A DNA stretch of 64,000 nucleotides. It comes from Iphione sp. A-MEVVRFRX5 (taxonomy: Eukaryota). The notes beneath the pieces were generated by a model. That model was not told where the DNA came from. It was given only the letters and a program-made list of their open reading frames with translations, and searched no databases. The translations under genes were made by a program, and so were the position numbers. The stretch is from the NCBI GenBank assembly GCA_976226885.1, contig OZ320313.1:121892001-121956000 (forward strand), given 5' to 3'. Positions 1 through 42,873 of the stretch are shown here, in pieces (position 1 is the stretch's first letter; each line of letters starts with the position of its first letter).

Positions 1-900
1 GATCTGGTATATCTCAGAGTACAACAATGCTAGGAAATCAGCCCTTCTCATCAGAATTGGCTTTAATACTGTGGTCGGGATGCTGCATATACCAGATGAC
101 TTATCAAGACATATTTTCTTCACAATGTCCTTGATATCTGTTGGCAATGGCATCCTTATCTCAAACCCGTCCATGGTTCTAAGATCGGCTTCTGAACTGG
201 TGGCCAGTGAGTCAGGCACCAGCTTGTGTACTTCATCTATGAAGTACCGATTGAGTCTTTCAGGTATCATCAGGTACCGTTTTGTTAGCCCCTTTTCAGC
301 AAAGAACCTTGTTTAGAATTTTCCATAAACCGCCTGAATCCCCACTTGCATCCTCTAATCTCGAGGCCCTGTATCCTTTCCTTTCTTGTGCTATCACCTG
401 CTTTAGTTCACCATTTAGGTGCTTAAAGATCCTCAAGGCATCCAGGTCCCCACGTGTTTTCCACCTCCAATGGAAGTGCGGTCTGTCTCATACCAGCTCC
501 ATCACACCTGGGCTCATCACGTATCCATCCTTACATGACTGCACCCAAATATTCTTCTCAGGGCATTCCTCCTCCAAGATCTTCTGCAGATTCTCCTCAT
601 AGATTTCCCAGGCTTTTTCATGGTGTCCTTCCAGTTTCATCGCTTCCCCTCTCAGTCTTGCTTCCAGAATGTTGTGGTCCACCTCTTTCCAGCTCCTGAC
701 TGTTATCTGTTTTCTCTCGATATGCAGCTTGCTTTTCTTCAGAACACAAGACCGGTAGGTGGTCACTTAGGTACCACTAAAGAGTTACTTGGCTAGAAAT
801 ACCTTTAAACCAGATATGATCAGGCAATGTGAATTCTCAACCATCGTTCCTGCATCACAAACCTGGAGAAATCCTTTGCCAGCAAACAGGTCAGTATGCC
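1..900 (-). pseudogene. APE C-terminus, linker and start of RT of the decayed LINE
   Basis: TDLFAGKGFLQVCDAGTMVENSHC/DHIWFKG/SDHLP vs LSGLGLAQVIHGSTMVEGIHCNDQIWVN/SDHWP. RKQITVRSWKEV..EECPEK vs KEVIVRKWSEV..YQCPER. IPTTVLKPILMRRADFL vs VPTRILKPVLMNMADFV in the 28954-31698 ORF. Confidence 0.85.
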
Positions 901-1451
901 TTTGTTGTCAATACATACAGGATAATCCAGGCTTGGTATGATGAGACCATACCTCATCGCAGTCATCTGGGCATACATGTTGTGGCATGTGATTACGCTA
1001 TTCAAAATGAGTTGTTCATTGTTGTCGATGTCTGGCTCGACTCTTGACAGTAGCATCCCCGAGATTGGGCATATGACTAACTTTGGTCCTGAGTTGACTG
1101 GACCAGCAATCCAGTTATGAATTCAGCACTCATAATGCCAGAGTCTCTCAATATACTCCATAGTGCTCCGGTATCGCAGTGTCAATTGCCCGGTCTCATA
1201 CCTTAATAGCTCATGCATACCCAGGCAGATCATCTCTAAGTCATAGGTTGATGTATCAAAGTACAAGCACCTGCTCCATAGTCGCTTGTAAGAAGGTTTC
1301 ACTGCGATGATCCAGTCCAAGTCCAGGTCAATTGGTGGTAGGCCTTCATCCTTAAGATCCATCACAGCTTCATCGACCCGGCTATCCACAACCATCAGCA
1401 CTCTTGTTCGCCGTTGTCCAGGGCCCGTTATGCCCTTCCGAATTGAATATT
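900..1451 (-). pseudogene. SGNH-hydrolase-like frame (frameshifted, C-terminally deleted)
   Basis: RVLMVVDSRV, YDLEMICLGMHE and SRVEPDIDNNEQLILNSVITCHNMYAQMTAMRYGLIIPSLDYPVC match 32328-33011 (KVLIVYDYRA, YDLVIVVMGIYA, ERAEPDCDFEVEQLRLNAYINTHNLFAEATARELGMVPCYLDHPIC). Confidence 0.85.
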
Positions 1452-1599
1452 CTGCCAAGAAAACAGAGAAGGGAGAGCATGGTGGGTACTAGCGTTGCAA
1501 CATACAATGTACTAGACTATGTGGTAGCAAACTACCACTCATCATACACTGCTTATTTTGGCACAGTGTCCTGCAGATGTCATTCAGAAGGATTATGCG

Positions 1600-1900
1600 T
1601 CAATGACTCCCGAGCCCTTCATCCTGAATTTTCATCAGCACAAAGAATTTTCTCTCAATTTACCTCTAAATTCCTGCTCCATTCTTCTGTTCCTGCTAAT
1701 TTGTTTCCCGAGCATCATGCGTCCCAGCCACTTTCACAAGAGGCAACGTCCTTGACCTTTGTCTTGTCGTTAGTGGTGCACACTTTCATTGTTTGCAACA
1801 CAGTTTCACAATTGTCATATTCATACCCATCAACAAACATCAGGGCGTGCTCAAATGGAGAAAGACTCCGGGACTTTGACCAAAATGCTCCGGGGCAATG
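1600..1900 (-). pseudogene. NADAR-domain remnant (ORF1 C-terminus)
   Basis: FWSKSRSLSPFEHALMFVDGYEYDNCETVLQTMKVCTTNDKTKVKDVASCESGWDA*CSGNKLAGTEEW aligns with YFTKDTDNLSMEEKSPVSHNGTWYENAELAYQTEKARVCGDEKAILELRNCTSGFEARRIGNQIQTNEKW. In-frame stops present. Confidence 0.8.
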
Positions 1901-2160
1901 GACGCAGGTGATAGGGACAGATCAGCGTGAACCAGTAGAGGGGCAGGTATAGAAAGGAACTGTAATTACTCAGGAACTACTGCACATAAATGGATGGGAT
2001 TTCGACCAAAATGCTCCGGGGCAATGGACGCCAGTGATAGGGGGCGGTTAGGGTGACCCAGTTCATGGGTTTGTAAAGAGAAAAATTGTGATAACTTGCA
2101 AACTATTCTACATAGAAGGATAGGACTTTAACCAAATATGTCTAGGGATGCCCTGGCCAC
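1871..2160. repeat. Degenerate 126-bp tandem repeat (two units plus a partial third)
   Basis: ggactttgaccaaaatgctccggggcaatggacgc at 1871, ggatttcgaccaaaatgctccggggcaatggacgc at 1997, ggactttaaccaaatatg at 2123. Confidence 0.75.
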
Positions 2161-16600: not shown

Positions 16601-17550
16601 TCCCGGAGTCAACGATCACTCCTGTGTCAACACCACCAATGTTGATAGTCAGCATATCAGCCTTGAATTTGCTCTTAATGTTAAACATGTGGGTGCCTTC
16701 ATCTGAACTGTCGTCTTCCTCCAGGTGACGCACCTTCGTCTTCTGCTTTCTTGGCTTTTTGTTGCCCTTTTCTTCTCTCTTCTGGGTCTTCCCCTTGGAG
16801 CGGCACATCTTTACGAAGTGGTCTTGCCCTCCGCACTTCTTACATTCCTGTCCCTTGGCTGGGCAGGATGGATCCTTACCGAAGTGTCCCCTGCGTCCAC
16901 ATCAGTAGCATTCGTCACCACCATCCTTGCGTCTTGGCCTTGTATTCTTGGACATAACCTTGCGAACTTCTTGCTTCTCCAGCTTCATCGCCGTAAACTG
17001 GGACTCCATGGCCTCGAATGTTGACGCGATGTTGAGCGTTTCAGGAAGCGTCAGGGTGTCGCCTCGCTCCAGCAACTTGCGACGCAGCTTGTCAGACTTG
17101 CAGTGCTGTACTACCTGGTCACGGATCTGGTTGTTCAGCTCATCTCTGTAATCACAGCCTTCTGACAGCTGCTTCAGTCGACTGACGTACTGGGCGACGG
17201 TCTCCTCACCTTGCTGTGCCTTCCTAAACACATGTCGCTGGTATGTGGCATTTGTCGTTGTGACGTAGTGTTGCCTCAGGGCTGCCAGTGCTGCAGAGTA
17301 GTCCTTCATCTCACCTCGGTCAGGTAGCATCTTGAAGGTCTCCCTCACTGCCGCACCAGCTGTGTAGAGCAGAAGGGCACGTCTCTGCGCCTTGTTGTCA
17401 TCGGATTCTTCTGTCACGAAGAGTCCCTTGCTGTCTGCATAAGCCTCAAAACTCTTCAATCCACGCCTTCCAGCGGACGCTGACAATGGTGGCGTCTCCA
17501 GTCGGGTCGAACGGCTTCATACCCCGCATATCGCTTAGGTCGATACCAGC
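13601..17550 (-). pseudogene. gag-pol of the Gypsy element (gag, Zn knuckles, protease, RT, RNase H, integrase)
   Basis: gag RALLLYTAG/YQRHVFRK; CGRRGHFGKDPSC; protease VDSGSD; RT SKLDLRYGYHQL, NISDDII; RNase H ADASPVSLGAVL, TDHKPL; integrase HEGH..CHSC, SDNGPQF, PQANGEVER. Several TGA stops at Arg (CGA) positions plus frameshifts. Confidence 0.95.
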
Positions 17551-27777: not shown

Positions 27778-28953
27778 CAGTTGCCTCTGCCTAAAGCATC
27801 CACCAAAGGGACTGTACAAAAGTGGTCTCCTAAGGCGAATGGTCGCCTAATCCATTGGTTAGGGGGTCAAGCCACAAAAAGATAATGTCTGAAATAATGT
27901 TCTAAAAGTGCTTAATTTGATGGGCAATAGTCCAAAAACGTTCTAAAAGTGCTGAATTTGATAGGGAAATGTCCAAAAAAGTTTTAAAAGTGCTCTTTGC
28001 TAGGTTCACTTGAGGGTTTCCTGTCACCTACAAAGCAGGTGACCGCTGACTTTTAGCACCAGGAACACTCAAACAACATGGGCAACCATCACTTGAGGGT
28101 CTCCTGTGACGTACAAAACAGGCGACTGCTGACTTTTAGTGCCAGAAACACTCAAACAACATGGCCAACCATCAATTGAGGGTCTAGTGTCACCTACAAA
28201 GTGGGAGACCACTGAGCTTTTGTGCTAGAAACACTCCAAAAACATGTGCGACCTGGGCTTGAGGCTCCAGTGTCACCTATTAAGCAGGAGACTGCCGAGG
28301 TCTCTGTCTGGATATGGGTTATCCATTGTTAAGATAAGATAAGATAAGATAACTGTTTATTCGGAATCTTTGAAATACAAAGTTCTTCGTCCGAAATATG
28401 TCGGACAATAAACTGGTTCTGCTAAGACGCGTTGAAATGTCTGTAATGATGCTTGAATACATTTGTCGGCCATAGACTATCACAATTTCGTTAGGATACA
28501 TAAATATTAAATGGTTGTCAGTTAAGGTAGGTATAATACTTAGTTCACATACTGGCCAGCAATAATCAAGTAGATCACAGATACAATGGATACAGGGTAC
28601 AAGAGAATCTTAGGTATTTGTCAACGTTACCCGAATATGCTTGTCAGCCAATCACTATCACAGTTTCCGTTAAGATACGTAGTAAAAGTAGTCTGTTAAG
28701 GTAGATGTAAATACCTGATTTAGTATTACGGCTATAGTGTATAACTCCACATCGTATCATGGGCCCTCATGGCTCGTACCCCTAGCATTATCAATCATCC
28801 ATGGGCTGTCTGTCAACCGTGAATTCACACATTCACACTCCTTGTTGTTATCTGTCTCACAGTCACTCATCATCAACCATACACCTTCATACTCCCCAAT
28901 CATCCATGATACTGTTCTCCCAGATATACCGACTCTACACCCAGAACCAATCA

Positions 28954-31698
28954 TTAACCCTTCGATAGGACCCATCTAGCCCTTGATTGTTCAGGTAACT
29001 CGTTCCACAGCTTAACTGCTTTATATCTGAGTGATCTTGCAAATAGAGACGACTTGGGTTTTGGGAGCGACCCACACCAGCCCAGTCCTTTTCTGGTACG
29101 AGTTTTCTCCTTCACAGGTATCAGTCCAAGATGCATTAGTTGATGGACTAGTAATAGTCCCTTGCTTTCAATAACCTCAGATACCCTCGGCAGACCATTT
29201 CTCCTTTGAAAATCGGTGGGGCTTTGGCGCTGATTACTCATGAGCGCCGCACGAACGCATTTATTTAGGCACACTTGGGCCCTGACAACATCTGATGGAT
29301 TGATTCCGAAAAGGCAACCCGCATGATAGTACAGATGCGTTAACACTAAACTATTGAACATCATCACCCTCACCTTCAGTGGCAGTATGATCTTTGTTCT
29401 CGCGATTCTGATTGCTGATAGCCACATTTTGCTGTTGAGTTTCCTGACTGACTTTTTCATGGTCAACTTTGCGTCAACCCACATGCCCAGCAGTTTCACC
29501 AACGTGACTGATATTAGCTTTTCCCCGTTGATGGACAGATCTAGGTCTATCCCCCGAGCGCGCCCCATGGGCATGTGTACGCACTTGTCTACGCTAATGA
29601 TCAGGCCCAGTGATTGGCACCAGTTCTCGACTGCCTTTAGTGCCGTAATGGCCACGCCCCTCAGCCTTAATAGGTCTCTGGCTCGTACCATCAATGTTGC
29701 GTCGTCCGCGTATAGAACCGATGACACACCATCCGGTAGACATAGTGATAGGCTGTTGATGATCAGTAGAAACCCCAGAGGTCCAAAGACGGACCCCTGG
29801 GGTACGCCGTGATTCACCTGCCTCACCTCTGACCTAGAGCCATGGCACTCAACATACTGCCGCCTGTCATTTAAATAGCTCTGCAGCATTGATGTGAGTT
29901 TTGGCCCTCCACCCACTCTCTCGACTTCGTCAATAACCTTCTTCCTAGGCACTAAATCAAACGCTTTTTTTAGATCTAGTAGTATGAGGCAGACATACTC
30001 GCCCCTGTTCATCGCCTCATGGGAGTCGGTTATCAGCTTACCCACAGCAGTCTGAGTTGAGTGCCTGCTGCGGAAGCCGTGTTGTGTGTGACTAATGACT
30101 CCCCTATCCTCTAAAATCCGTTGCAAGCTTCTACTAAACCATGCCTCACAAATTTTGCCTATCACAGGCAAAATACTAACTGGCCTATAATTTGCAAGGC
30201 AGTTCCTATCACCTTTTTTATACACAGGACAAACTCGAGCGACTTTCCAGCTCCCCGGGTAAATCCCGGTTTGATAAACTTGAGTGAAAAGCCATACCAC
30301 AAAGTCCGCCATGTTCATTAGCACTGGCTTCAGGATCCGTGTAGGCACCCCTTGTATCCCGGACGACTTTCTGACGTCAACTCTCTTAATTAGACTGACG
30401 ACTAATTGCTCTGTTGGTGGCTCAAGCTCGAATGTATTCTCCTTTCCAACTTTTACACCCTTACTGTTTGCGCATGCACCCGGCTCACCTGTCTGTACAA
30501 GGCGCTCCACCTCGTCTATAAACTGGCCATTAAACCTTTCGGCTAAAGATGGAAGACCATCAACTGGGCCAGGGAGCGTGTCCTTCACCTGATCTCTCCC
30601 CATACACTCATCTATGATACCCCATAATTTTTTACAATCTCCACCAGCTTTTGCTACCCTGTTTGTCCAGTATTCCTGTTCTTCTTTCTGCACTACCTGC
30701 TTTAGCTTATTGTTTAAAAACTTAAAAATGTTTCGGCTATCGCTACATCCTGTCTTCTTCCATTTCTTTAAAAAATAGTATCTATCAGCCGCCAGTTCTT
30801 TGGCACCTTCACTCATCTGAAAACCGTCTCTCCTAACTCTTATCTCTATTTTCCTCTCCGGGCACTGGTAGTCTAGCTCATCCCTAACGGCTCCTATTAA
30901 CCCATCCCATGCTTCTACATGTCCCTGACTTGTTATATCCACTGCCGATTTGCCCTTATCTATCACCTCTCCTATATTCACCTCACTCCATTTTCTAACT
31001 ATTACCTCTTTTTTTACTTTGCTAACCTTTCCCTTCTTCAGCACAATACTTACTGGCCAATGGTCGCTGAGCGTCCCTATCCCTATGGTACCACCTAGGT
31101 GTCCACTGAAATTTACCCATATCTGATCATTACAGTGAATCCCTTCTACCATGGTGCTTCCATGAATCACCTGGGCAAGTCCCAACCCACTTAGCATCTG
31201 TGTGAGGCTTCTCCCAGATTTACCCTGGTCCCCGTAGTGGAAATTTAGATCCCCTAGTAGTACAGTATCCGTGTTACCTCTCTCCCCCCATGTGTCCCAT
31301 ACGTATTGAAGATCCCTCATAGAGTTTGCTATTTTATCTGAAGGTGGTCTATAGGTACATATGATCTTCATCGGTTTCCTTTTCCCATACTTTAGTTCCA
31401 CCCCCAAAAACTCACAAAGACCAGCTACTCCCGTTGGGCGGTACTCACTCAATAGAGTTATTCCCTCACGAACATAGATTACTATTCCCCCACCTTTCCT
31501 CTCTGAGCCGCTCGACCTATCGGCCCTAACACTCACATACCCAGTAATCTTAATCTCACCATCCGCATGGCTTCGGTTTAGCCAACTCTCAGAGATGCAC
31601 ATGACATCTACGTGTTCATTTGCCATGTACTCACTCAGCTCGCCTATTTTCTTTCTCAAACTCCTGACGTTATAGTGAGCTACCTTGACCCCCTTCAT
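28954..31698 (-). CDS. APE endonuclease - reverse transcriptase polyprotein (914 aa)
   Basis: APE: NVRSL, SESWL, GGGIVIYV, YRPP, GDLNF, SDH. RT: NYRPVSILP, QHGFR, DLKKAFD, GVPQGSVFGP, YADD. Confidence 0.97.
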   Translation of the reverse strand: MKGVKVAHYNVRSLRKKIGELSEYMANEHVDVMCISESWLNRSHADGEIKITGYVSVRADRSSGSERKGGGIVIYVREGITLLSEYRPTGVAGLCEFLGVELKYGKRKPMKIICTYRPPSDKIANSMRDLQYVWDTWGERGNTDTVLLGDLNFHYGDQGKSGRSLTQMLSGLGLAQVIHGSTMVEGIHCNDQIWVNFSGHLGGTIGIGTLSDHWPVSIVLKKGKVSKVKKEVIVRKWSEVNIGEVIDKGKSAVDITSQGHVEAWDGLIGAVRDELDYQCPERKIEIRVRRDGFQMSEGAKELAADRYYFLKKWKKTGCSDSRNIFKFLNNKLKQVVQKEEQEYWTNRVAKAGGDCKKLWGIIDECMGRDQVKDTLPGPVDGLPSLAERFNGQFIDEVERLVQTGEPGACANSKGVKVGKENTFELEPPTEQLVVSLIKRVDVRKSSGIQGVPTRILKPVLMNMADFVVWLFTQVYQTGIYPGSWKVARVCPVYKKGDRNCLANYRPVSILPVIGKICEAWFSRSLQRILEDRGVISHTQHGFRSRHSTQTAVGKLITDSHEAMNRGEYVCLILLDLKKAFDLVPRKKVIDEVERVGGGPKLTSMLQSYLNDRRQYVECHGSRSEVRQVNHGVPQGSVFGPLGFLLIINSLSLCLPDGVSSVLYADDATLMVRARDLLRLRGVAITALKAVENWCQSLGLIISVDKCVHMPMGRARGIDLDLSINGEKLISVTLVKLLGMWVDAKLTMKKSVRKLNSKMWLSAIRIARTKIILPLKVRVMMFNSLVLTHLYYHAGCLFGINPSDVVRAQVCLNKCVRAALMSNQRQSPTDFQRRNGLPRVSEVIESKGLLLVHQLMHLGLIPVKEKTRTRKGLGWCGSLPKPKSSLFARSLRYKAVKLWNELPEQSRARWVLSKG

Positions 31699-32327
31699 CC
31701 CAAGGATGTTATGCCTAACTAATGTGAGTCAGAAAGTGATACGGTGCCCTCCGTTGTTCTCAGTCACTCACCAACCATCCAGCCAGACAATTCACGATCA
31801 TACGTTCTAGAATAACATTCATAATCAGGTGACAAGCCACACATACTCTGATAACATTCTAACCCGGGATATATGCATATCACTCCACGCTCCTAACAGC
31901 CATTCCTCTTAGATAATAGCTCACATATTTACAACATGAACGTACGTACCCTTATTCTGCGATAAATATACAATCTGACTACGCCAGCTTCTTCTCATTT
32001 CAGATTCACCACGCTTAAATTTCACAAATGTACAACGTAAATGCAATGTATAACATAAACATCCATACGATTATTCTGCTTTACACGATCAAATCGACAG
32101 CATTGATATCTAGAAGGTAACTGTTCCCGGGCTTTCTCCCGCTAGTAAAACTTCTAATAAAACAAGATGCGATTATCTAAACGTCTGATGGAATCGGTAA
32201 ATATCAACGCAAACACTCAATCTTGTTTAAGATACCATACTGGTCTGGCGATGTTCATTCTACACTAGAAATAGTGTCTTTGAATTAGACCAGGCCAGTA
32301 TAACACCACCCAATCAGGTCTGATACC

Positions 32328-33011
32328 TTAGTGCCCGTGCTTCCTCATGTACTCTCGTAGTGACTCACATAAGATGTGTGTCCAATCGGAAAGGGCCAGT
32401 CTCGTCGGAGTGACCCCATCGTCCTCAAGGTACATGTCCTCAATATGGAGACCACCGTTTCTCATACTGCAGATTGGATGGTCCAGGTAGCATGGCACCA
32501 TGCCTAGCTCACGCGCCGTTGCTTCTGCGAACAAGTTATGAGTATTGATGTAAGCATTGAGGCGCAGCTGTTCCACCTCAAAGTCGCAGTCCGGTTCCGC
32601 ACGCTCCATTTGCGCGGACGCCAAGTTGGCAAGTAGCACCCTTGGACCTACGTCGTTTGGACGACAGATGTTCTTCACCAGTTGTAGATAGTAGTTCATG
32701 TGGAGTGCGAACGAGCGCGGCGATTTCGGCGTCAGCGTCCAATGGCCCTTCTCCAGCTTCATCACCGCATAGATGCCCATGACCACAATCACTAGGTCAT
32801 AGGCCGATACGTCCTTGAACAATCGCTTTTTGGCCAGGCGTCGATACGACATATGCCTGACTTGTACTCCGTGGATTGTCATCCTCGGTAGGTGTTCAAG
32901 ACCGATCCGCCTTACTGCTCTGGCTGCTCTGTAGTCGTATACGATGAGCACCTTCACGTCACGGCCCATCCGTGCGTGTCTGTTCGTCTTGATGACTACC
33001 TCTGTTGTCAA
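32328..33011 (-). CDS. SGNH/GDSL-hydrolase-like protein (the ORF-track start is TTG; first ATG is at aa 15; probable spliced exon starting at 33001)
   Basis: Block-I-like KVLIVYDYR, block-III-like YDLVIVVMGI, RVLLANL, block-V-like LEDDGVTPT..W. A homolog is conserved in the relic at 900-1451. Confidence 0.7.
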   Translation of the reverse strand: MTTEVVIKTNRHARMGRDVKVLIVYDYRAARAVRRIGLEHLPRMTIHGVQVRHMSYRRLAKKRLFKDVSAYDLVIVVMGIYAVMKLEKGHWTLTPKSPRSFALHMNYYLQLVKNICRPNDVGPRVLLANLASAQMERAEPDCDFEVEQLRLNAYINTHNLFAEATARELGMVPCYLDHPICSMRNGGLHIEDMYLEDDGVTPTRLALSDWTHILCESLREYMRKHGH

Positions 33012-33217
33012 AGAGAAAACACAGTTCTCAGAAGCAGTCCGAGGCGGCTACATATTTCTGCCTTCATATCAATAAAACACCCACTGAGGATCGTAACGCT
33101 AGCTAAGTGCTTGTGACAGACCCTCATAAGATAGTAACAAGAACAATAGCAATCTGTACAAGTGCAAAACCATCATATTATCACACAATAAAAATATTTC
33201 ACTCGTACATGATCAAG

Positions 33218-35083
33218 TTACTGGGCCACCCCGGATTGTGTACGCCTTACACTAGCACAAGGAGCACCTGTGTCAACGGCCGATCTTGGTAGATTAACAT
33301 CCTGTGCATTTAATTTATCACGTATTCTCATCAAAACATTCCCAAGAGTGTTACTACCGATTTTCTCAAGGCATTCATTTCCATTTGGCAGCCATGGCCC
33401 ACTACCAGTACCAATATAACTATCCCAGTCACAAAAAACCAGATGGTTCCTCGTTTCCATCAGTGCCTTTCGTGCCAACAGAGAGAGTTCATATTTACTA
33501 GTTAATACTTCCTCCAGTGTTACCTCTGAACTCGCGGACCATTTTTCGTTAGTCTGGATTTGGTTCCCAATGCGTCTCGCCTCAAATCCACTCGTACAGT
33601 TGCGAAGTTCCAAAATTGCTTTCTCGTCACCACACACCCGCGCTTTCTCTGTCTGATATGCTAATTCGGCGTTCTCGTACCAAGTACCGTTGTGCGAGAC
33701 CGGACTTTTTTCTTCCATCGATAAGTTGTCCGTGTCTTTTGTAAAATAGTGATGCTCACCCCTCGTTTCCTGCGAATTCTTGCCTGGATGTAATTTATGA
33801 GGTAATAAATCCAGGTTTTTGTAGCTGAGGACGGTCCCGTCGATCACGACATCAACACCTCGAACCGTTGCACGACAGCCATGGCGCCGCGCCGCTGCCG
33901 CAACCTTCTGTAGTTTGTTGTGTTTTTCCAGGCCCGTAGGTGGAATCTCCTCCTTAAAACGCACTCGTCTGCATCCCTTCAACCGTGTGAGATTGCTCTT
34001 CTTACTCAGGGCTACATCTCTCAAGATGCTGTCCTTGAAGAGGACTCCCATCGTCGCCGTATTGTTGTTTTCTTCCAAGCAGACGACATCAGAGATACTG
34101 TCGTCACTCAGACCAGAGGCATTACGCACTATCTTCCTTGTCACTTGGTATCTATTGATGTCTTCTTTGGTGCTAACGCCTTCCACCAGTAGTTTTCTTG
34201 ATCTATCCCGAATCTCGATCCTAGTTAAGTCATCATCAACCCGGTCGCATCTCTTGTCAGTCAGCATCGCGAGCGCTTCCACCCGCTTCATTGATGCTTG
34301 TATGTCTTGTAGCCTGCTCGAGTTCACGTCAATACACTCATCTCTTGCCTCTACCTTGGCTGATACATCATCCAATTTAACCTTCAATAGATTTAGTTCT
34401 ATCCAGACTTGATCCCGCAGTAACTTCATCTCTTTCTGCAGGCCCCGGACGAGTGAGAGGATCGCTTCCTCTGACCCTACTGTCGTGTCAACGCTGTCAG
34501 CCACCACTTCGTGCTGTCCGTTTGCTGCTTCTACCGGTCCGCCCTTAGCAGCCGTCGTGGGTGACGATGCGCCCGTATCTATAGAACCGGTTACGTCATG
34601 TTGCAAGGTAGAGGATGTATTTACAGCATGGACATCCTCATCATGGCCAGTATCCTGATGCCGCACCGATATTGTTGACAATCCACTGTCAGTGTCAACA
34701 CCCACCATCGTAGGCGTGACAGACTGTGTCAACTCCGTTTCAATCACCAAATCACCCTGTGTGTCTTGTTGCACCTCAGTATTTGGTTGTCTTCCTGTGT
34801 TTTTAGTTGATGTATCACCCACTCGCTTGTCTTTGCCATACCTTTTTTGCGTCTTGGGCCCATAATCGCCAGACATACTGGTCGCCAGCTGAGTAGTCGC
34901 GCTGACCTTTCCCGCTCTTCCTCGTGTTGTTCTCCTATTGTCGCCCGGTGGTCTCGATCCTGGAGAGAAATCCATGATATCTCCCACCGACAGACTTTTC
35001 TCCCTCAATCTTGCCATGGATCTCAAAATTGGGGTATTCATAATGCCCCTGCTGTCCTCATTTAATCGAGGTCTGCCCGGCAT
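33218..35083 (-). CDS. ORF1p (621 aa): disordered N-terminus, coiled coil, L1/Tnp22-like RRM region, C-terminal NADAR (YbiA-like) domain
   Basis: Heptad-rich EEAILSL...RIEIRDR; RSRKLLVEGV; RVRFKEEIP. NADAR motifs GTWYENAELAYQTEKA..GD, EARRIG, W, KY, ALMET, DSYIGTG and GSNTLGNVLMRIRDKL at ~33310-33755. Confidence 0.88.
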   Translation of the reverse strand: MPGRPRLNEDSRGIMNTPILRSMARLREKSLSVGDIMDFSPGSRPPGDNRRTTRGRAGKVSATTQLATSMSGDYGPKTQKRYGKDKRVGDTSTKNTGRQPNTEVQQDTQGDLVIETELTQSVTPTMVGVDTDSGLSTISVRHQDTGHDEDVHAVNTSSTLQHDVTGSIDTGASSPTTAAKGGPVEAANGQHEVVADSVDTTVGSEEAILSLVRGLQKEMKLLRDQVWIELNLLKVKLDDVSAKVEARDECIDVNSSRLQDIQASMKRVEALAMLTDKRCDRVDDDLTRIEIRDRSRKLLVEGVSTKEDINRYQVTRKIVRNASGLSDDSISDVVCLEENNNTATMGVLFKDSILRDVALSKKSNLTRLKGCRRVRFKEEIPPTGLEKHNKLQKVAAAARRHGCRATVRGVDVVIDGTVLSYKNLDLLPHKLHPGKNSQETRGEHHYFTKDTDNLSMEEKSPVSHNGTWYENAELAYQTEKARVCGDEKAILELRNCTSGFEARRIGNQIQTNEKWSASSEVTLEEVLTSKYELSLLARKALMETRNHLVFCDWDSYIGTGSGPWLPNGNECLEKIGSNTLGNVLMRIRDKLNAQDVNLPRSAVDTGAPCASVRRTQSGVAQ

Positions 35084-35333
35084 GATTGTGGTTTGTGACT
35101 GATTATCTGGAGAGCACCGCGTACACGTCCTACTCGAGCGCCATATAAATAAAAATGTTTGGTACTGAGATTCATGGTCTTAATGGCCGAATGGTGTCCC
35201 TAGCAATTAGTTGCCATGGGCAGAGTCTGCTACATAGAGAATACACTAAATTTCAGTCGGCTCTGGGAAAAAGTGGTCGCCATGGATGACTGGTCTCCTG
35301 AAGCGAATGGTCGCCAGGTGAGAGTTGACTGTA

Positions 35334-39427: not shown

Positions 39428-42400
39428 ATCAAGAATCAATCAAGAATCAAGAATCGTTTATTCACTTCTTAACTGACAATGTCAATAAGATCTCCCAGCG
39501 AAAAGCGACAGGAAATGACATAATATAAGAGATAACTTAGGTACTAACTATACAAAAAAATATCTTTGACTAGAATCCATCATGCTTGAAGTTAGTATTC
39601 TAATTGTCGTAGTCTGTGACAAGTCTCGATTGCACATCCGATTCTTTTTCGCTACCTATCATTTCTTTTATTGGTCACTTCATAATTATCAACTACAAGA
39701 AAAGTCTTCTTTTATTTGACTATTAGGCATCACATTCTACAGTTAAAAAATCTTTTACATCGGTCATTATAGTTGCAACACATATCCACTACTGGACTCT
39801 TATATCACTTTCTCGTTCTTCGTGGTTTGTATGGAGTACACCAATTCCATTAGTGACGGGGATTAAGCATGCATCTCTGGTGTAGCAAACGTCTCCTGAA
39901 GGTCTTCGGGTCCACACAGGTTCGTAGTGACACCGGGAGGTTATTCCACATCTTCACACCTGAATAGAGAAACGAATTTTTATACAGGCGCGTCCTAGGT
40001 TTTCTCATTTGCAGTACTGGGCCTACACTTAATCTTGTATGTGCACCATTTCTCTTGGTCTTTTCCTTCACAACTCCCAGCAGGTATAGCCTGTGGATCA
40101 GACAGACTAGGGCTCTATTGCCTCTTGTCTCAAGTGTGTCTATTCGCAGCTTGGCTCTCAACCTTGTGTTTGACATATATGAGAATCGTCTTCCTATCAT
40201 CATACCTCTCATCACCCTATTGCAGTGTAATTGCAAATTCTCTAAAGTTGTCCGACCATGACATACTAGGAATGGAAGACTGTAGTCGAATAGCGTCAAC
40301 AAGAAGCCTTTGAATAGTCTGCCTTTTTCTTTGATGCTGAGACAGTTAGAAATTTTGCTAAGGTAGTACCCTCTCTGCCTTGTCGTCTGAGATAATTTAT
40401 TCAAAAGAGGTTGCCAATTTAATGAACTATCTAAATAATGTCCCAGAAATTTGCAGTTTTCCGTTTTTTGAAGTTGATTGCGATTTAATGTTAGATCTAG
40501 ATCTAGGTCCTTGCTCTTGCCAAAGGTCATATAAAAAGTTTTTGCGATACTTACAATCAGACCATTTTTACACGTCCACTCGTGAACGTCGCGTAGTCCA
40601 CGCTGTAACTTTAGCCACAGTGCCAGCGCATTGGAAGCCACAGCATATATCGTTACATCGTCAGCATACATTATACTGGATGTCACTAGTTGCGTATTTG
40701 GTATGTCGTTTATTAGCACACTGAACAAGAAGGGGCCCAGTATGCTCCCCTGTGGGACCCCAATCGGCATAGCAACTGAATCTGAACAATGACCATTGCA
40801 TTTAACAAATTGCTTTCGATCTGATAGATATGACTTGATCCAGGCTATTGTTCTTGGTCCTATTCCAGCTCCTACTAACTTATTTAGAATGATCACTTGA
40901 TTGGCCAGATCGAACGCCTTCGTCATGTCAATGAAGACCACTCCTACATGTCTATTGTTATCTATCGCTTCGTAGACGCCTGCTAGTAGGGCTGCCGCTG
41001 CTGTGGAGGTGCTTCTACCCGGTCTAAAGCTATGTTGTTGCTGACTAAAAAAATGTGTGCTGTCCAGATAGTCCACTAGTTGGTTGTATACCAGTCGCTC
41101 TAGGACCTTACCTATGATTGGCAGAATCGCTACTGGCCTATAATTGCTGCTGTCTGCCTCCAACCCTTTCTTATGTAAAGGAGATATTCTCGCTGATTTC
41201 CATGAGTCAGGGAATACCGAACGTGCTATGGAGTCATTAAAAATGTCTCTGATTGGATTTACGGCCAAAATTAAACTGTCTTTCAAGATTTTCATTGGGA
41301 TATTTTCGAACCCACTAGGTTTGTTTATTTTTAAGGTTTGAATTACTTTTGAGACTTCCGATGCTCTTACCGATTTTAACTCCCATCCCATACTATTCTG
41401 AGCATTCTGTGTGATATTTAATCCCAAGTCATTTGATAGTTGCATTGGCTGGCTGACAAAGTAATCGTTGAGGATACTTGGTACCCTCGTTGTTTCAACC
41501 CATACACCCCCTTCCTTCAGACGTATTTCTTTTGGGGTCAGTTCCCTCTTCAAGACTAGATTATTGATTACTTGCCAGTATTCGCGGATATCCTTGCATG
41601 CATTTAGCTTCTTTGCAAAAAATTCCCTCTTTAATCTATGACATAATTTCTTTACCCTTCCCTTGTAATATTTATAAATTCGGAAACTGTCAATATTCCC
41701 TGTTGTCCTAAAGTCTTTCAGGAAATAATCACGGTTGGCAATATATTCTTTCAACTCCCTCGTCACCCATTCTTTCCCATTAGGCCTTTTCTTTTTCTGT
41801 TTTAAAGGGCAAACTGCATCTACCGCAGTCTTGATTGCTTCTTGCAAAGATGTCCATTTAACCTCCCCTTTCTCCTCATGATTGTTTTCTACTGCAAGTA
41901 TGGTTTCCAAGATATGTTCATTTAAGATGTTCTTATTGTATTGAGACCAGTCCCTGCACAATTTTGTTTCTTTGTTCTTTTTCTCCCTGTCCTTTTTGTC
42001 TGTGATGTATGTTGCTACATGATCACTTATTGCATCATCGAAGGTACCGCTCTTATTTATTGTGGACATGCTGGAAAAGATAAGGTCAATACATGATTTA
42101 GCCGTTTCATGAATTAACGTTGGCACTCCGATGTATTGATGTAGGCCCACTGAGCTGCATGCGCTCAACAGGTCTCGCTTTGCCAGTGACTCATTAAAGA
42201 TGTTTATGTTGAAATCACCTCCTAGTACTATATTTGCAAAGCCCTGTTTCCGAAATTTTATAAGCTTGTCTTTTATATTACTTGTGAGCTCCCTCAAATT
42301 CCCATGCGGTGGCCTATAGATTGTTCCTAGTATCAATGGTTTGCGATATGGACTAGATATTTTTAACCAAAGACTTTCTAAGTTCTCATCAGAAACGCAT

Positions 42401-42873
42401 TCCTCTTCCAATTTTTCCGCATTGGCCAAATTGCTTACATACACCACAACCCCTCCCCCCCGTTTCTTTCTATCATTGCCGCGGTCCTGCCTTATACAAT
42501 GATACCCTTCCAACTTTATAGCGGACAGCGGTACTGCACTGTTCAGCCAAGTCTCTGATAATCCACATGCAAATATTTTCTCTCTTCTTATTAATGATTC
42601 AAATGAGTCAATTTTTGGTAGTAGGCTATGTATATTTAAGAAACAAAAGACACGACCTTTCATACTTTATTGATATATGAGCTATATCGTATACGTTTTC
42701 CAAATTTAGTAGATATATAGACGATAAGATACTAGCCAATTGAATCTGACGGAGTATCAAACGGCTCCAGGCAATTATATCCTACTAACAGATCTACAAA
42801 CTGGCCACATCTGAAATGCGGACAGTTTGAGAAAGAACGGAGGGTTTCCTTAATCTGGACGTTCGACTGAACT
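39428..42873 (-). mobile_element. CR1-group LINE with an intact APE-RT ORF, no ORF1 (probably 5'-truncated)
   Basis: 3' end AATAAA + (GATTCTT)n at 39428-39462; ~210 nt upstream of the ATG, then host repeat. Confidence 0.88.
39850..42663 (-). CDS. APE endonuclease - reverse transcriptase polyprotein (937 aa)
   Basis: NIHSL, SETWL, GGGVVVYV, YRPP, GDFN, SDH; NYRPVAILP, DMTKAFD, GVPQGSILGP, YADD. Confidence 0.97.
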   Translation of the reverse strand: MKGRVFCFLNIHSLLPKIDSFESLIRREKIFACGLSETWLNSAVPLSAIKLEGYHCIRQDRGNDRKKRGGGVVVYVSNLANAEKLEEECVSDENLESLWLKISSPYRKPLILGTIYRPPHGNLRELTSNIKDKLIKFRKQGFANIVLGGDFNINIFNESLAKRDLLSACSSVGLHQYIGVPTLIHETAKSCIDLIFSSMSTINKSGTFDDAISDHVATYITDKKDREKKNKETKLCRDWSQYNKNILNEHILETILAVENNHEEKGEVKWTSLQEAIKTAVDAVCPLKQKKKRPNGKEWVTRELKEYIANRDYFLKDFRTTGNIDSFRIYKYYKGRVKKLCHRLKREFFAKKLNACKDIREYWQVINNLVLKRELTPKEIRLKEGGVWVETTRVPSILNDYFVSQPMQLSNDLGLNITQNAQNSMGWELKSVRASEVSKVIQTLKINKPSGFENIPMKILKDSLILAVNPIRDIFNDSIARSVFPDSWKSARISPLHKKGLEADSSNYRPVAILPIIGKVLERLVYNQLVDYLDSTHFFSQQQHSFRPGRSTSTAAAALLAGVYEAIDNNRHVGVVFIDMTKAFDLANQVIILNKLVGAGIGPRTIAWIKSYLSDRKQFVKCNGHCSDSVAMPIGVPQGSILGPFLFSVLINDIPNTQLVTSSIMYADDVTIYAVASNALALWLKLQRGLRDVHEWTCKNGLIVSIAKTFYMTFGKSKDLDLDLTLNRNQLQKTENCKFLGHYLDSSLNWQPLLNKLSQTTRQRGYYLSKISNCLSIKEKGRLFKGFLLTLFDYSLPFLVCHGRTTLENLQLHCNRVMRGMMIGRRFSYMSNTRLRAKLRIDTLETRGNRALVCLIHRLYLLGVVKEKTKRNGAHTRLSVGPVLQMRKPRTRLYKNSFLYSGVKMWNNLPVSLRTCVDPKTFRRRLLHQRCMLNPRH

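What the first reader, a model, noticed from the sequence alone, without database searches (positions are those of the whole stretch)
28331..35145. Intact three-module LINE: ORF1 with NADAR domain, a separate SGNH-like frame, then APE-RT
Seen: a complete 6.8-kb element (5' ATGGCG motif to AATAAA+(TTATC)n tail) with three stop-free frames in tandem. Established: CR1/L2-group LINEs normally have two ORFs, and where an SGNH esterase occurs (e.g. ZfL2-1-type elements) it is part of ORF1. Inference: this family carries two enzyme-derived accessory modules (NADAR and SGNH) in an arrangement I do not recognise as described. The relic at 1-2160 keeps the same order, arguing against a chance chimera. 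It may already exist unremarked in repeat libraries.
Basis: partly seen in the sequence, partly recalled or inferred. Interest (0 to 1): 0.9.

Follow-up and report, generated by a model that had tools for sequence, protein, structure and literature searches.

The report
Three-gene LINE with NADAR and esterase-like modules
This is a real, apparently intact jumping gene (a LINE retrotransposon) that carries two extra enzyme-derived modules besides its copying machinery: a NADAR domain fused to its first protein and a separate, degenerate esterase-like gene. This combination recurs in related elements and is not described in the literature I could search.

Summary
On the minus strand, 35145 to 28331, there are three stop-free frames in three phases:
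- ORF1, 621 aa, with a C-terminal NADAR domain (Pfam 6e-15).
- A middle frame (MID) of 239 codons.
- An APE-RT ORF2 of 914 aa.

These are followed by a 3' hairpin, AATAAA and a (TTATC)4 tail.

The same order (NADAR, MID, RT) is found in the decayed relic at window 1-1921, a different family at 32-38% aa identity. It is also found in L002, an unrelated public contig whose RT is the best database match.

MID hits no Pfam or PDB profile, and AlphaFold failed on it. It is nevertheless collinear with a family of stand-alone about 230-aa LINE ORFs (L012, L002, L003) that carry the four SGNH blocks (hhalign P 4.6e-4, z=9 against shuffles).

In this copy the esterase Ser, Asn and His equivalents are Tyr, Tyr and Thr. 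Two NADAR acidic residues also appear lost, so both modules may act non-catalytically.

A NADAR domain in LINE ORF1 was noted in passing in 2025 for oyster elements in Repbase. I did not find the three-cistron arrangement described.

Verdict: a new variant of a known kind, of moderate interest.

The parts
28331..35145 (-). The 3' end is well defined. The 5' end is not verified.
35084..35145 (-). Putative short 5' UTR (62 nt) upstream of the ORF1 ATG.
   Evidence: The boundary is unverified, as no TSD was found.
33218..35083 (-). ORF1 (621 aa plus stop). It has a low-complexity N-terminal third, a central region alignable with L002 ORF1, and a C-terminal NADAR domain.
33311..33757 (-). NADAR (YbiA-like) domain, ORF1 residues 443-591.
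   Evidence: Pfam PF08719 E 6.3e-15, 56.2 bits against a cutoff of 35.1. The profile with L002 hits YbiA 2b3w at 8.6e-9 and 8bau at 2.8e-5.
33048..33217 (-). Spacer between the ORF1 stop and the start of the MID stop-free frame. It has stops in all frames.
32328..33047 (-). MID: a stand-alone esterase(SGNH)-like frame of 239 codons plus stop. The first ATG is at 32969. Block equivalents are VLIVYDYRA (Ser to Tyr39), HG (Gly60), MGIYA (Asn to Tyr93) and DDGVTP (Asp210, His to Thr213).
31699..32327 (-). 630-nt non-coding spacer between MID and ORF2, with weak internal direct repeats.
28954..31698 (-). ORF2 (914 aa plus stop): APE endonuclease (about aa 8-230) and reverse transcriptase (aa 494-710, YADD at 663-666).
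   Evidence: Pfam RVT_1 1.3e-30 and Exo_endo_phos 1.7e-8. Invariant catalytic columns are listed.
28381..28414 (-). 3' UTR hairpin (13 bp in two helices of 5 and 8 bp), about 20 nt upstream of AATAAA.
   Evidence: z -2.0 against shuffles
28333..28361 (-). AATAAA, CAG, then the (TTATC)4 microsatellite tail.
1..1921 (-). Decayed relic of a related family with the same order: NADAR piece 1921-1718, MID 1488-823, APE C-terminus and RT 907-1. The MID block I keeps the Ser (VLMVVDSRV).

Best explanation
This is an autonomous non-LTR retrotransposon (LINE) with a CR1-like 3' end and three cistrons.

- ORF1p is an RNA-packaging-type accessory protein: a low-complexity N-terminus and a central region shared with L002, with a YbiA-family NADAR domain fused at its C-terminus.
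- The second cistron (MID) is a highly diverged descendant of the stand-alone SGNH-esterase-like ORF that sister elements (L012, L002) carry at the same position.
- ORF2p (APE plus RT) nicks the target and copies the RNA by target-primed reverse transcription. It presumably recognises the 3' hairpin and (TTATC)n tail, as in CR1/L2 elements.

What is shown: the three frames, the NADAR and APE-RT identities, recurrence of the architecture, and homology of MID to the esterase-like ORF family.

What is inferred:
- The accessory modules serve the element's ribonucleoprotein.
- In this copy both work mainly as binding or scaffold modules rather than enzymes. The esterase Ser, Asn and His equivalents are Tyr, Tyr and Thr, and two acidic NADAR residues appear replaced.
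- In relatives with intact motifs (L002, L012) they may still be catalytic: NADAR removing ADP-ribose from nucleic-acid bases or a related N-glycosidic substrate, and the esterase acting on or binding lipids as in ZfL2-1.
For: - Frames and phases.
- Pfam NADAR 6.3e-15, RVT_1 1.3e-30, Exo_endo_phos 1.7e-8.
- NADAR profile hits YbiA and 8bau.
- The relic has the same order, at 32-38% aa identity in all three modules.
- L002 is the locus of the best RT hit. It has ORF1 with NADAR (2.9e-23), then an ORF with LLITDSRG, GGACD and DGLHPT (weak Lipase_GDSL_2 hit, E 0.047), then APE-RT.
- L012 has an intact 230-aa ORF with VLIVGDSRAKHL, SGLT, GVCD and DGCH, about 550 nt upstream of APE-RT.
- In the RT tree the window element groups with window LINE2 (SH-aLRT 98). 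That pair groups with L002 and L012/P0028 (88).
- hhalign of the MID family against the esterase-like family gives 196 collinear columns and P 4.6e-4. The observed score is 32.4. Shuffled columns give 13.0 +/- 2.2 (maximum 18.9, n=60), and the reversed alignment gives 11.2.
- The relic MID against L012 gives pairwise z=3.8 (4/1000).
- The pooled alignment against a TesA profile gives z=4.7 (0/60), with the four SGNH blocks in register.
- A profile of MID plus L002 and L003 gives GDSL-like proteins (9hi4, 9hi6, 9hi5) as its best non-coiled-coil PDB matches, E 0.002-0.08.
- 3' hairpin and microsatellite tail. CR1 elements have a conserved 3' hairpin and octamer microsatellite (PMC4316615).
- In the CR1 group, poly-A tails are reported only for Zenon elements (PMC13343379).
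Against: - MID has no hit in Pfam at E<=10.
- MID has no hit in PDB sequences, alone or as a family profile.
- MID has only one true relative among 1.8 billion representative proteins.
- HMMER profiles of the MID family and of the esterase-like family do not find each other at E<=1.
- Pairwise window MID against L002, L003 or L012 is not above shuffles.
- The two AlphaFold models are low confidence (pLDDT 42.6 and 50.9), and Foldseek on them is meaningless.
- The esterase-like family itself fails Pfam. It reaches only z=2.8 against TesA on its own.
- No second copy of this exact family, no TSD and no verified 5' end, so 'intact and active' is not shown.
- MID has no conserved AUG close to the ORF1 stop in this copy (249 nt to the first ATG), so its translation is uncertain.
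- The RT clade was not tested against labelled references.
Confidence: 0.8

Rival explanations
1. MID is a conserved LINE accessory protein of a fold unrelated to SGNH hydrolases. On this reading, the block-like matches to esterase ORFs are convergent or over-read.
For: - No curated profile or PDB sequence hit for MID or its family.
- HMMER cross-searches are negative.
- Pairwise scores for the window copy are at chance.
- AlphaFold gave low confidence.
- Three of the five SGNH signature residues are absent.
Against: - The hhalign match is end to end, at P 4.6e-4 and z=9 over shuffles.
- The relic copy keeps the block I Ser and scores z=3.8 against L012.
- MID has the same size and the same position as the esterase-like ORF in the sister RT lineages.
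- Adding the MID family to the esterase family raises the score against TesA rather than lowering it.
Confidence: 0.15
2. The three-module arrangement is a local accident: a 5'-truncated or ORF1-less LINE sitting downstream of unrelated NADAR and MID genes or TE fragments.
For: - The 630-nt stop-filled spacer before ORF2.
- The nearest RT relative in the window (LINE2) has no NADAR or MID upstream.
- No TSD was found.
Against: - The same order and orientation occur in the relic, a different family, and in L002 from another assembly.
- L012 has the esterase-like ORF directly upstream of APE-RT.
- All three modules diverge between element and relic by similar amounts, 32-38%.
Confidence: 0.03
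3. The copy is a dead relic. ORF1 and MID were once a single longer ORF (coiled coil, NADAR, esterase) or MID has lost its start. On this reading the present 'separate frame' is a decay product.
For: - Similarity between the element and the relic extends upstream of the first ATG of MID, with PP..S..VF.L..E..I in both.
- 171 nt of stop-filled sequence separate ORF1 from MID.
- The catalytic residues are degenerate.
Against: - In L002 the ORF1 stop is followed 15 nt later by the ATG of the esterase-like ORF, in another frame.
- In L012 an upstream frame ends 34 nt before the ATG. Separate cistrons are therefore the family's norm.
- All three frames of the window copy are stop-free, whereas the relic and L002 carry stops or frameshifts.
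Confidence: 0.1

Closest known systems
CR1/L2-type LINEs with an esterase (type IV) ORF1p, e.g. zebrafish ZfL2-1 (PMC3905857, PMC4120745)
   Same: - An APE-RT LINE carrying an SGNH-type module upstream of ORF2.
- A CR1-like 3' end (hairpin plus short tandem-repeat tail, no poly-A).
- The esterase is thought to act on or bind lipids rather than RNA.
   Different: - In ZfL2-1 the esterase is a domain of ORF1p, preceded by a coiled coil, and it has an active Ser-Asp-His triad.
- Here the esterase-like module is its own cistron with no coiled coil, placed after a separate ORF1.
- In this copy it lacks the Ser, Asn and His.
- It is too diverged for Pfam.
Repbase 'Tx1' LINE families of Crassostrea gigas whose ORF1 proteins look like YbiA-family NADAR domains (remark in PMC12477816, 2025)
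   Same: A NADAR domain in the ORF1 protein of a LINE from an invertebrate.
   Different: - Those families are filed under Tx1 (L1 group), whereas this element has CR1-like 3' features.
- No second accessory ORF is mentioned for them.
- I could not obtain their sequences, so identity with them is untested.
Ectocarpus Gypsy lineage with a NADAR domain at the N-terminus of Pol (PMC12477816)
   Same: A retroelement that has captured a YbiA-family NADAR domain.
   Different: It is an LTR element, the domain is fused to Pol rather than to a Gag/ORF1-like protein, and the host is a brown alga.
Bdelloid rotifer Vesta LTR elements and Athena Penelope-like elements with a stand-alone GDSL esterase ORF3, including Athena-L derivatives without catalytic residues (PMC5408684)
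   Same: - A stand-alone GDSL/SGNH-like ORF as an extra cistron of a retroelement.
- Catalytically dead derivatives exist.
   Different: - A different element class, with the ORF downstream of pol.
- That paper reports those esterases as separate captures from the LINE esterases.
Free-standing NADAR enzymes: E. coli YbiA, DarT1-associated NADAR, Phytophthora NADAR 8bau (PMC11543638, PMC11125620)
   Same: - The same domain family by Pfam and by profile.
- The Glu..Lys motif is present (AELAYQTEK).
   Different: - Those are single-domain enzymes.
- Here the domain is the C-terminal part of a 621-aa LINE protein.
- In this copy the equivalents of the YbiA-type Glu and the nearby Asp appear replaced.

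Membership tests
APE-type non-LTR retrotransposon (LINE) | An ORF with an N-terminal apurinic-like endonuclease and a reverse transcriptase with the YADD motif | tested here: met
   Pfam Exo_endo_phos 1.7e-8 and RVT_1 1.3e-30. Catalytic columns E37, D150/N152, D212/H213 and YADD 663-666 are invariant in the alignment with two other LINE ORF2s.
APE-type non-LTR retrotransposon (LINE) | Insertion flanked by target-site duplications, with multiple genomic copies | tested here: inconclusive
   No TSD longer than 4-6 nt was found. The window holds only a diverged relic and no second copy of this family. The rest of the genome is not available.
CR1 group (CR1/L2-like LINEs) | 3' UTR hairpin followed by a short tandem-repeat tail rather than poly-A | tested here: met
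   Hairpin at 28381-28414, then AATAAA, then (TTATC)4. The sister LINE2 ends AATAAACG(ATTCTTG)n.
CR1 group (CR1/L2-like LINEs) | RT domain clusters with reference CR1-group RTs (RTclass1/Repbase) | not testable with these tools
   No labelled reference RT sequences were available. The tree contains only unlabelled database hits.
NADAR superfamily (Pfam PF08719, YbiA-like) | Significant match to the family profile over its whole length | tested here: met
   56.2 bits against a gathering score of 35.1, covering profile positions 9-162 of 163. The profile with L002 hits YbiA at 8.6e-9.
NADAR superfamily (Pfam PF08719, YbiA-like) | Catalytic residues as in characterised NADARs: the Glu and Lys of the E-x6-K motif, the YbiA-type Glu (E125 in P. 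nicotianae numbering) and D130 | tested here: inconclusive
   The E-x6-K motif is present (AELAYQTEK). W133 is present. E125 and D130 align to Ile/Phe and Ser, next to a 6-aa insertion, in the MAFFT alignment with L002. L002 keeps E, D and W. The residue roles are taken from PMC11543638.
SGNH/GDSL hydrolase fold (for MID) | Match to a curated SGNH/GDSL profile | tested here: not met
   No Pfam family at E<=10 for MID, the relic pieces or P0036. No PDB sequence hit for the MID family profile.
SGNH/GDSL hydrolase fold (for MID) | Four conserved blocks (I GDS, II G, III GxND, V DxxH) in order, shown by homology to sequences that have them | tested here: met
   hhalign against L012, L002 and L003 gives P 4.6e-4 and z=9 over shuffles, with blocks I, III and V in register. 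The pooled alignment against TesA gives z=4.7. This is remote homology, not a direct profile hit.
SGNH/GDSL hydrolase fold (for MID) | Catalytic Ser-Asp-His triad and oxyanion Gly/Asn | tested here: not met
   The window MID has Tyr39, Gly60, Tyr93, Asp210 and Thr213. The relic keeps the Ser. P0036 also has Thr in place of His. MID should therefore not be called an active esterase.
SGNH/GDSL hydrolase fold (for MID) | Flavodoxin-like five-strand alpha/beta fold | tested here: inconclusive
   AlphaFold gave pLDDT 42.6 and 50.9. The second model has a beta-alpha-beta order compatible with the fold, but Foldseek matches are meaningless (TM 0.1-0.2).
Tx1 clade LINEs (the clade under which NADAR-bearing oyster LINEs are filed) | RT groups with Tx1/L1-group references, with an A-rich or poly-A 3' end | tested here: inconclusive
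   The 3' end is a (TTATC)n microsatellite, not poly-A, which argues against membership. The RT test could not be run without reference sequences.

The most novel reading that the evidence does not exclude
[quoted passage not shown] NADARs reverse guanine ADP-ribosylation, and their role in animals is unknown. The lineage also carries a separately translated esterase-derived protein. That would make it the first described three-cistron LINE with two enzyme-derived accessory proteins, and it could account for part of the unexplained 'animal NADAR' gene set. The window copy would be a member in which both modules have drifted to non-catalytic roles.
Probability: 0.15. Interest if true: 0.8.

Novelty: new variant of a known kind. 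Interest (0 to 1): 0.5.

Why it matters
LINE ORF1 proteins are known to be modular: RRM, CCHC, PHD and esterase types have been described.

This element adds two points.
- A NADAR domain can be part of ORF1p. So far this has been noted only in passing.
- An esterase-derived protein can be a separate second cistron alongside a different ORF1, giving a three-gene LINE.

NADAR enzymes were shown in 2023 to remove ADP-ribose from guanine in DNA, and their function in animals is open (PMC11125620). LINE-borne NADARs give a concrete setting in which to test whether nucleic-acid ADP-ribosylation acts on retroelements.

There is also a practical consequence. Some 'NADAR genes' and orphan ORFs in invertebrate gene sets may be LINE cistrons. 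Curated profiles miss the esterase-like module completely.

Tried and rejected
- **Word-indexed protein searches.** MID and the ORF1 C-terminal half found nothing.
- **Exhaustive phmmer of MID.** It gave one true fragment (P0036) and two spurious repeat proteins.
- **Exact look-ups.** The three ORFs are not in the protein collection.
- **Metagenome scans.** Both were unproductive. The NADAR-ORF1 alignment found none. The RT alignment found one 5'-truncated L2-like locus, L007.
- **AlphaFold on MID.** The 4-row and 7-row alignments gave pLDDT 42.6 and 50.9. Foldseek against PDB on the better model gave TM 0.1-0.2, so I disregarded it.
- **Early hhalign runs without L012.** They were not significant, with E 0.05-0.3. 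Adding L008's esterase-like ORF1 domain only added noise.
- **Pairwise shuffle tests of window MID against L002, L003 and L012.** All were at chance.
- **HMMER cross-searches between the MID and esterase-like families.** Negative.
- **Pfam on L003 and L012 esterase-like ORFs.** Negative.
- **ORF1 central region as an L1-type coiled coil, RRM and CTD.** hhalign against the L009, L010 and L003 ORF1s was not significant, and Pfam gave no Transposase_22 hit. I therefore do not claim an RRM.
- **TSD search.** Negative.
- **TesA profile.** The 80 loci from genome contigs are all 88-100% identical orthologues, so the profile is shallow.
- **Chimera explanation.** Rejected because the architecture recurs.
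- **Literature searches.** Searches for DUF1768 with retrotransposon, and for three-ORF non-LTR elements, found nothing relevant.


Full report
**1. Observation**

The feature is on the minus strand. Read from 35145 down to 28331, the 6815 nt contain exactly three long stop-free frames, each in a different phase:
- ORF1: 35083-33221, 621 aa from the ATG.
- A middle frame, here called MID: 33047-32331, 239 codons, with the first ATG at 32969.
- ORF2: 31698-28957, 914 aa.

ORF1 and the MID frame are separated by 171 nt. MID and ORF2 are separated by 630 nt. Both spacers are full of stops in all frames.

The 3' end reads AATAAA-CAG-(TTATC)4-TTAAC. It is preceded by a hairpin at 28381-28414. There are no N runs in the window.

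The 5' end at 35145 could not be verified. I found no target-site duplication, and no second copy of this family is in the window.

**2. What the modules are**

Pfam gives a full-length NADAR match in ORF1 residues 443-591 (E 6.3e-15, 56.2 bits against a cutoff of 35.1). In ORF2 it gives RVT_1 (1.3e-30) and the APE-type endonuclease (1.7e-8). MID has no Pfam match, even at E<=10.

A profile of the ORF1 C-terminal halves of this element, the relic and L002 hits E. coli YbiA (2b3w, 8.6e-9) and a solved NADAR (8bau, 2.8e-5). The NADAR call is therefore safe.

**3. Recurrence of the architecture**

*Relic.* The relic at the left edge of the window has, on the minus strand:
- a NADAR piece at 1921-1718;
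- MID at 1488-823, with one stop;
- the APE C-terminus and RT at 907-1.

Identities to the element are 32%, 32% (E 2e-23) and 35-38%. The relic is therefore a different family. MID has diverged no faster than the recognised coding modules, and the spacers are not conserved.

*L002.* The best RT match in the large protein collection (P0001, 25% identity) lies on a 2-Mb contig of an unrelated public assembly. Its locus, L002, shows the same order:
- an ORF1 ending in NADAR (Pfam 2.9e-23);
- 15 nt later, the ATG of a second ORF that carries LLITDSRG, CRGAT, GGACD and, after a frameshift, DGLHPT;
- a 1.2-kb spacer;
- APE-RT.

*L012.* P0028 is the sister of the L002 RT in my tree. Its contig, L012, has an intact 230-aa ORF with VLIVGDSRAKHL, SGLT, LTGVCDV and LQDGCHLSP, about 550 nt upstream of APE-RT. 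The contig is too short to show whether a NADAR ORF1 precedes it.

*Tree.* In a quick maximum-likelihood tree of the ORF2 proteins, the window element pairs with the second intact LINE of the window (SH-aLRT 98). That pair groups with L002 and L012 (88).

The three-module layout is therefore a property of a lineage, not of one locus.

Other RT neighbours have other ORF1 types:
- L008: coiled coil, an esterase-like domain and CCHC knuckles in one ORF1.
- L009, L010 and L011: ORF1s that I read by eye as coiled coil plus RRM-like. This was not confirmed; hhalign was not significant.
- L003: an esterase-like 243-aa frame upstream of a Cys-rich, putatively PHD-like, plus coiled-coil ORF1.

They fit the modular, reticulate ORF1 evolution described for this superfamily (PMC4120745).

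**4. Is MID SGNH-like?**

Direct tests failed:
- No Pfam hit.
- No PDB sequence hit for MID or for its family profile.
- Only one true relative (P0036, a 111-aa fragment) among 1.8 billion representative proteins.
- Two AlphaFold runs with pLDDT 42.6 and 50.9, with meaningless Foldseek output.
- Pairwise scores of the window MID against L002, L003 and L012 at chance.
- HMMER profiles of the two groups do not find each other.

Indirect tests succeeded once L012 was available:
- L012, L002 and L003 are clearly one family, with pairwise z of 16.8 and 11.8.
- The relic MID, which keeps the block I serine (VLMVVDSRV), scores z=3.8 against L012 (4 of 1000 shuffles).
- A profile-profile comparison of the MID family (window, relic, P0036) with that family aligns 196 columns end to end, with P 4.6e-4.
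- Sixty column-shuffled controls gave 13.0 +/- 2.2 (maximum 18.9) against the observed 32.4. The reversed alignment gave 11.2.

In that alignment:
- VLIVYDYRA lies on VLIVGDSRA (block I).
- MGIYA lies on TGVCD (block III).
- DDGVTP lies on QDGCHL (block V).

For the link to bona fide SGNH enzymes I used a profile of E. coli TesA orthologues:
- The esterase-like family alone scores z=2.8 (1 of 60 shuffles reaches it).
- The pooled MID plus esterase-like alignment scores z=4.7 (0 of 60).
- In the printed alignment for the esterase-like family, GDS, the block II Gly, GxND and DGxHP are in register.

A mixed profile (MID family, L002 and L003) also has GDSL-like proteins as its best non-coiled-coil PDB matches, at E 0.002 to 0.08. 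The aligned parts are block III, the N..a...g.p.vD helix-strand and DG.HPT.

I conclude, at about 0.85, that MID descends from an SGNH-type esterase ORF. It should not be called an esterase. The window copy has Tyr39, Gly60, Tyr93, Asp210 and Thr213 at the positions of ZfL2-1 S143, G165, N195, D279 and H282 (residue roles from PMC3905857).

**5. State of the NADAR domain**

Characterised NADARs use a Glu and a Lys seven residues apart. YbiA-type members also have a Glu (E125 in the P. nicotianae structure) near D130 and W133 (PMC11543638).
- The window ORF1 has the first motif (AELAYQTEK) and the Trp.
- In the alignment with L002, the E125 and D130 positions are Ile/Phe and Ser, beside a 6-aa insertion.
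- L002 keeps Glu, Asp and Trp when aligned directly to 8bau and YbiA.

Activity of the window copy is therefore doubtful. This rests on an alignment with an indel at the critical place.

**6. Clade**

I could not run a labelled RT phylogeny. Three features favour the CR1 group:
- The 3' hairpin followed by a short tandem-repeat tail.
- The CR1-like tail AATAAACG(ATTCTTG)n of the sister LINE2.
- Weak to good matches of these ORF2s to Pfam Exo_endo_phos_2.

CR1 elements have a conserved 3' hairpin and octamer microsatellite (PMC4316615). Within the group, poly-A tails are reported only for Zenon (PMC13343379).

From my own knowledge, the C-terminal '...LWNxLP' motif of ORF2 is also typical of CR1/L2-type elements. 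I did not test this.

**7. Comparison with what is known**

- Esterase modules in LINEs are described as a domain of ORF1p (type IV), preceded by a coiled coil. They occur in CR1, L2 and RTEX, and also in Penelope-like elements (PMC3905857, PMC4120745).
- Metcalfe and Casane found the esterase type only in vertebrate subgroups of the Jockey superfamily.
- Stand-alone GDSL ORFs, some catalytically dead, are known in rotifer LTR and Penelope-like elements (PMC5408684).
- A 2025 paper on Ectocarpus transposons reports NADAR domains in a Gypsy lineage. It remarks that Repbase ORF1 proteins of several oyster 'Tx1' LINE families also look like NADAR domains (PMC12477816).
- I found no description of a LINE with a NADAR-bearing ORF1 plus a separate esterase-derived cistron.
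- Papers on NADAR enzymes list molluscs, echinoderms, cnidarians and others as carrying NADARs, and call their role in animals unknown (PMC11125620).

**8. Mechanism**

*Shown:* a complete coding set for target-primed reverse transcription, plus two conserved accessory modules.

*Inferred:*
- ORF1p packages the RNA.
- MID is translated as a second cistron. The gaps of 15 nt and 34 nt in L002 and L012 would suit termination-reinitiation. The 249-nt gap to the first ATG in the window copy leaves its translation uncertain.
- The 630-nt spacer before ORF2 has weak direct repeats, and the L002 spacer has three clear ones. It may carry internal translation or promoter signals.
- In copies with intact motifs, the NADAR could remove ADP-ribose or a similar adduct from the element's RNA or cDNA. 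The esterase could bind or process lipids, as proposed for ZfL2-1.
- In the window copy, both more likely act as binding modules.

**9. Verdict**

- The finding is a new variant of a known kind: the LINE ORF1/accessory-module repertoire.
- It is of moderate interest in itself. Interest would be higher if the NADAR proves to be an active counter-measure to nucleic-acid ADP-ribosylation.

Noticed in passing
window 39853-42663 (minus), tail about 39428-39462: A second intact LINE ORF2 (937 aa, APE+RT, 28% identical). It is the closest RT relative of the NADAR element in my tree (SH-aLRT 98). It ends AATAAACG(ATTCTTG)n after a hairpin. No ORF1, NADAR or MID-like sequence is detectable in the 4 kb upstream, so it is either an ORF1-less sister family or a truncated copy.
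   Followed up: partly
window 28006-28292: An 83-bp tandem repeat (3.5 copies, 80% matches) begins about 40 nt beyond the (TTATC)n tail of the element. The LINE sits next to, or inside, a small satellite array.
   Followed up: no
window 13601-17486 (minus) and 52285-53262 (minus): LTR-retrotransposon coding remnants. They include a gag-like frame (Retrotrans_gag/PNMA), an aspartyl protease, RT plus RNase H (1e-29), and separately an integrase (H2C2 plus rve). The window is a transposon-rich eukaryotic region.
   Followed up: partly
window 59351-60280 (plus): Another RT-like stretch, 23% identical to residues 445-756 of the element's ORF2 (tblastn 6e-14). It was not examined further.
   Followed up: no
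L002 4863-5632: The 1.2-kb spacer between the esterase-like ORF and ORF2 of L002 holds three direct copies of an approximately 40-86-nt motif (TTAGGGTTTYGTCAGGTGACGGCTCCCTACACT...). The window element's 630-nt spacer has only weak 22-34-nt direct repeats (31799-32079). Repeats directly upstream of ORF2 may mark an internal promoter or translation signal.
   Followed up: partly
L003 3182-3910 and 4699-5850: In this distant relative, an esterase-like 243-aa frame (ILSDSKAKY, GTCD, DGMHPN) lies upstream of a Cys-rich, putatively PHD-like, plus coiled-coil ORF1 and APE-RT. This is the opposite order to the window element. An RT fragment just upstream (2605-2886) leaves open whether the frame belongs to the same insertion.
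   Followed up: partly
L008 360-1907: A marine-metagenome LINE whose single ORF1 combines a coiled coil, an esterase-like domain with Thr in place of the block I Ser (FLGDTNLG), and two CCHC knuckles. It is another unlisted ORF1 domain combination in the same RT neighbourhood.
   Followed up: no
window 1854-2102 (minus): The relic carries a roughly 126-nt tandem duplication just upstream of its NADAR fragment. Two about 41-codon frames read nearly the same peptide (...PYHWRPLPRSILV...).
   Followed up: no
L017, L014, L015: A 926-bp contig filed under Ruminococcus albus 8, and two chromosomes filed under Enterobacter hormaechei, encode a TesA 100% identical to E. coli K-12. The first looks like contamination. 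The others may be mislabelled records in the public genome collection.
   Followed up: no
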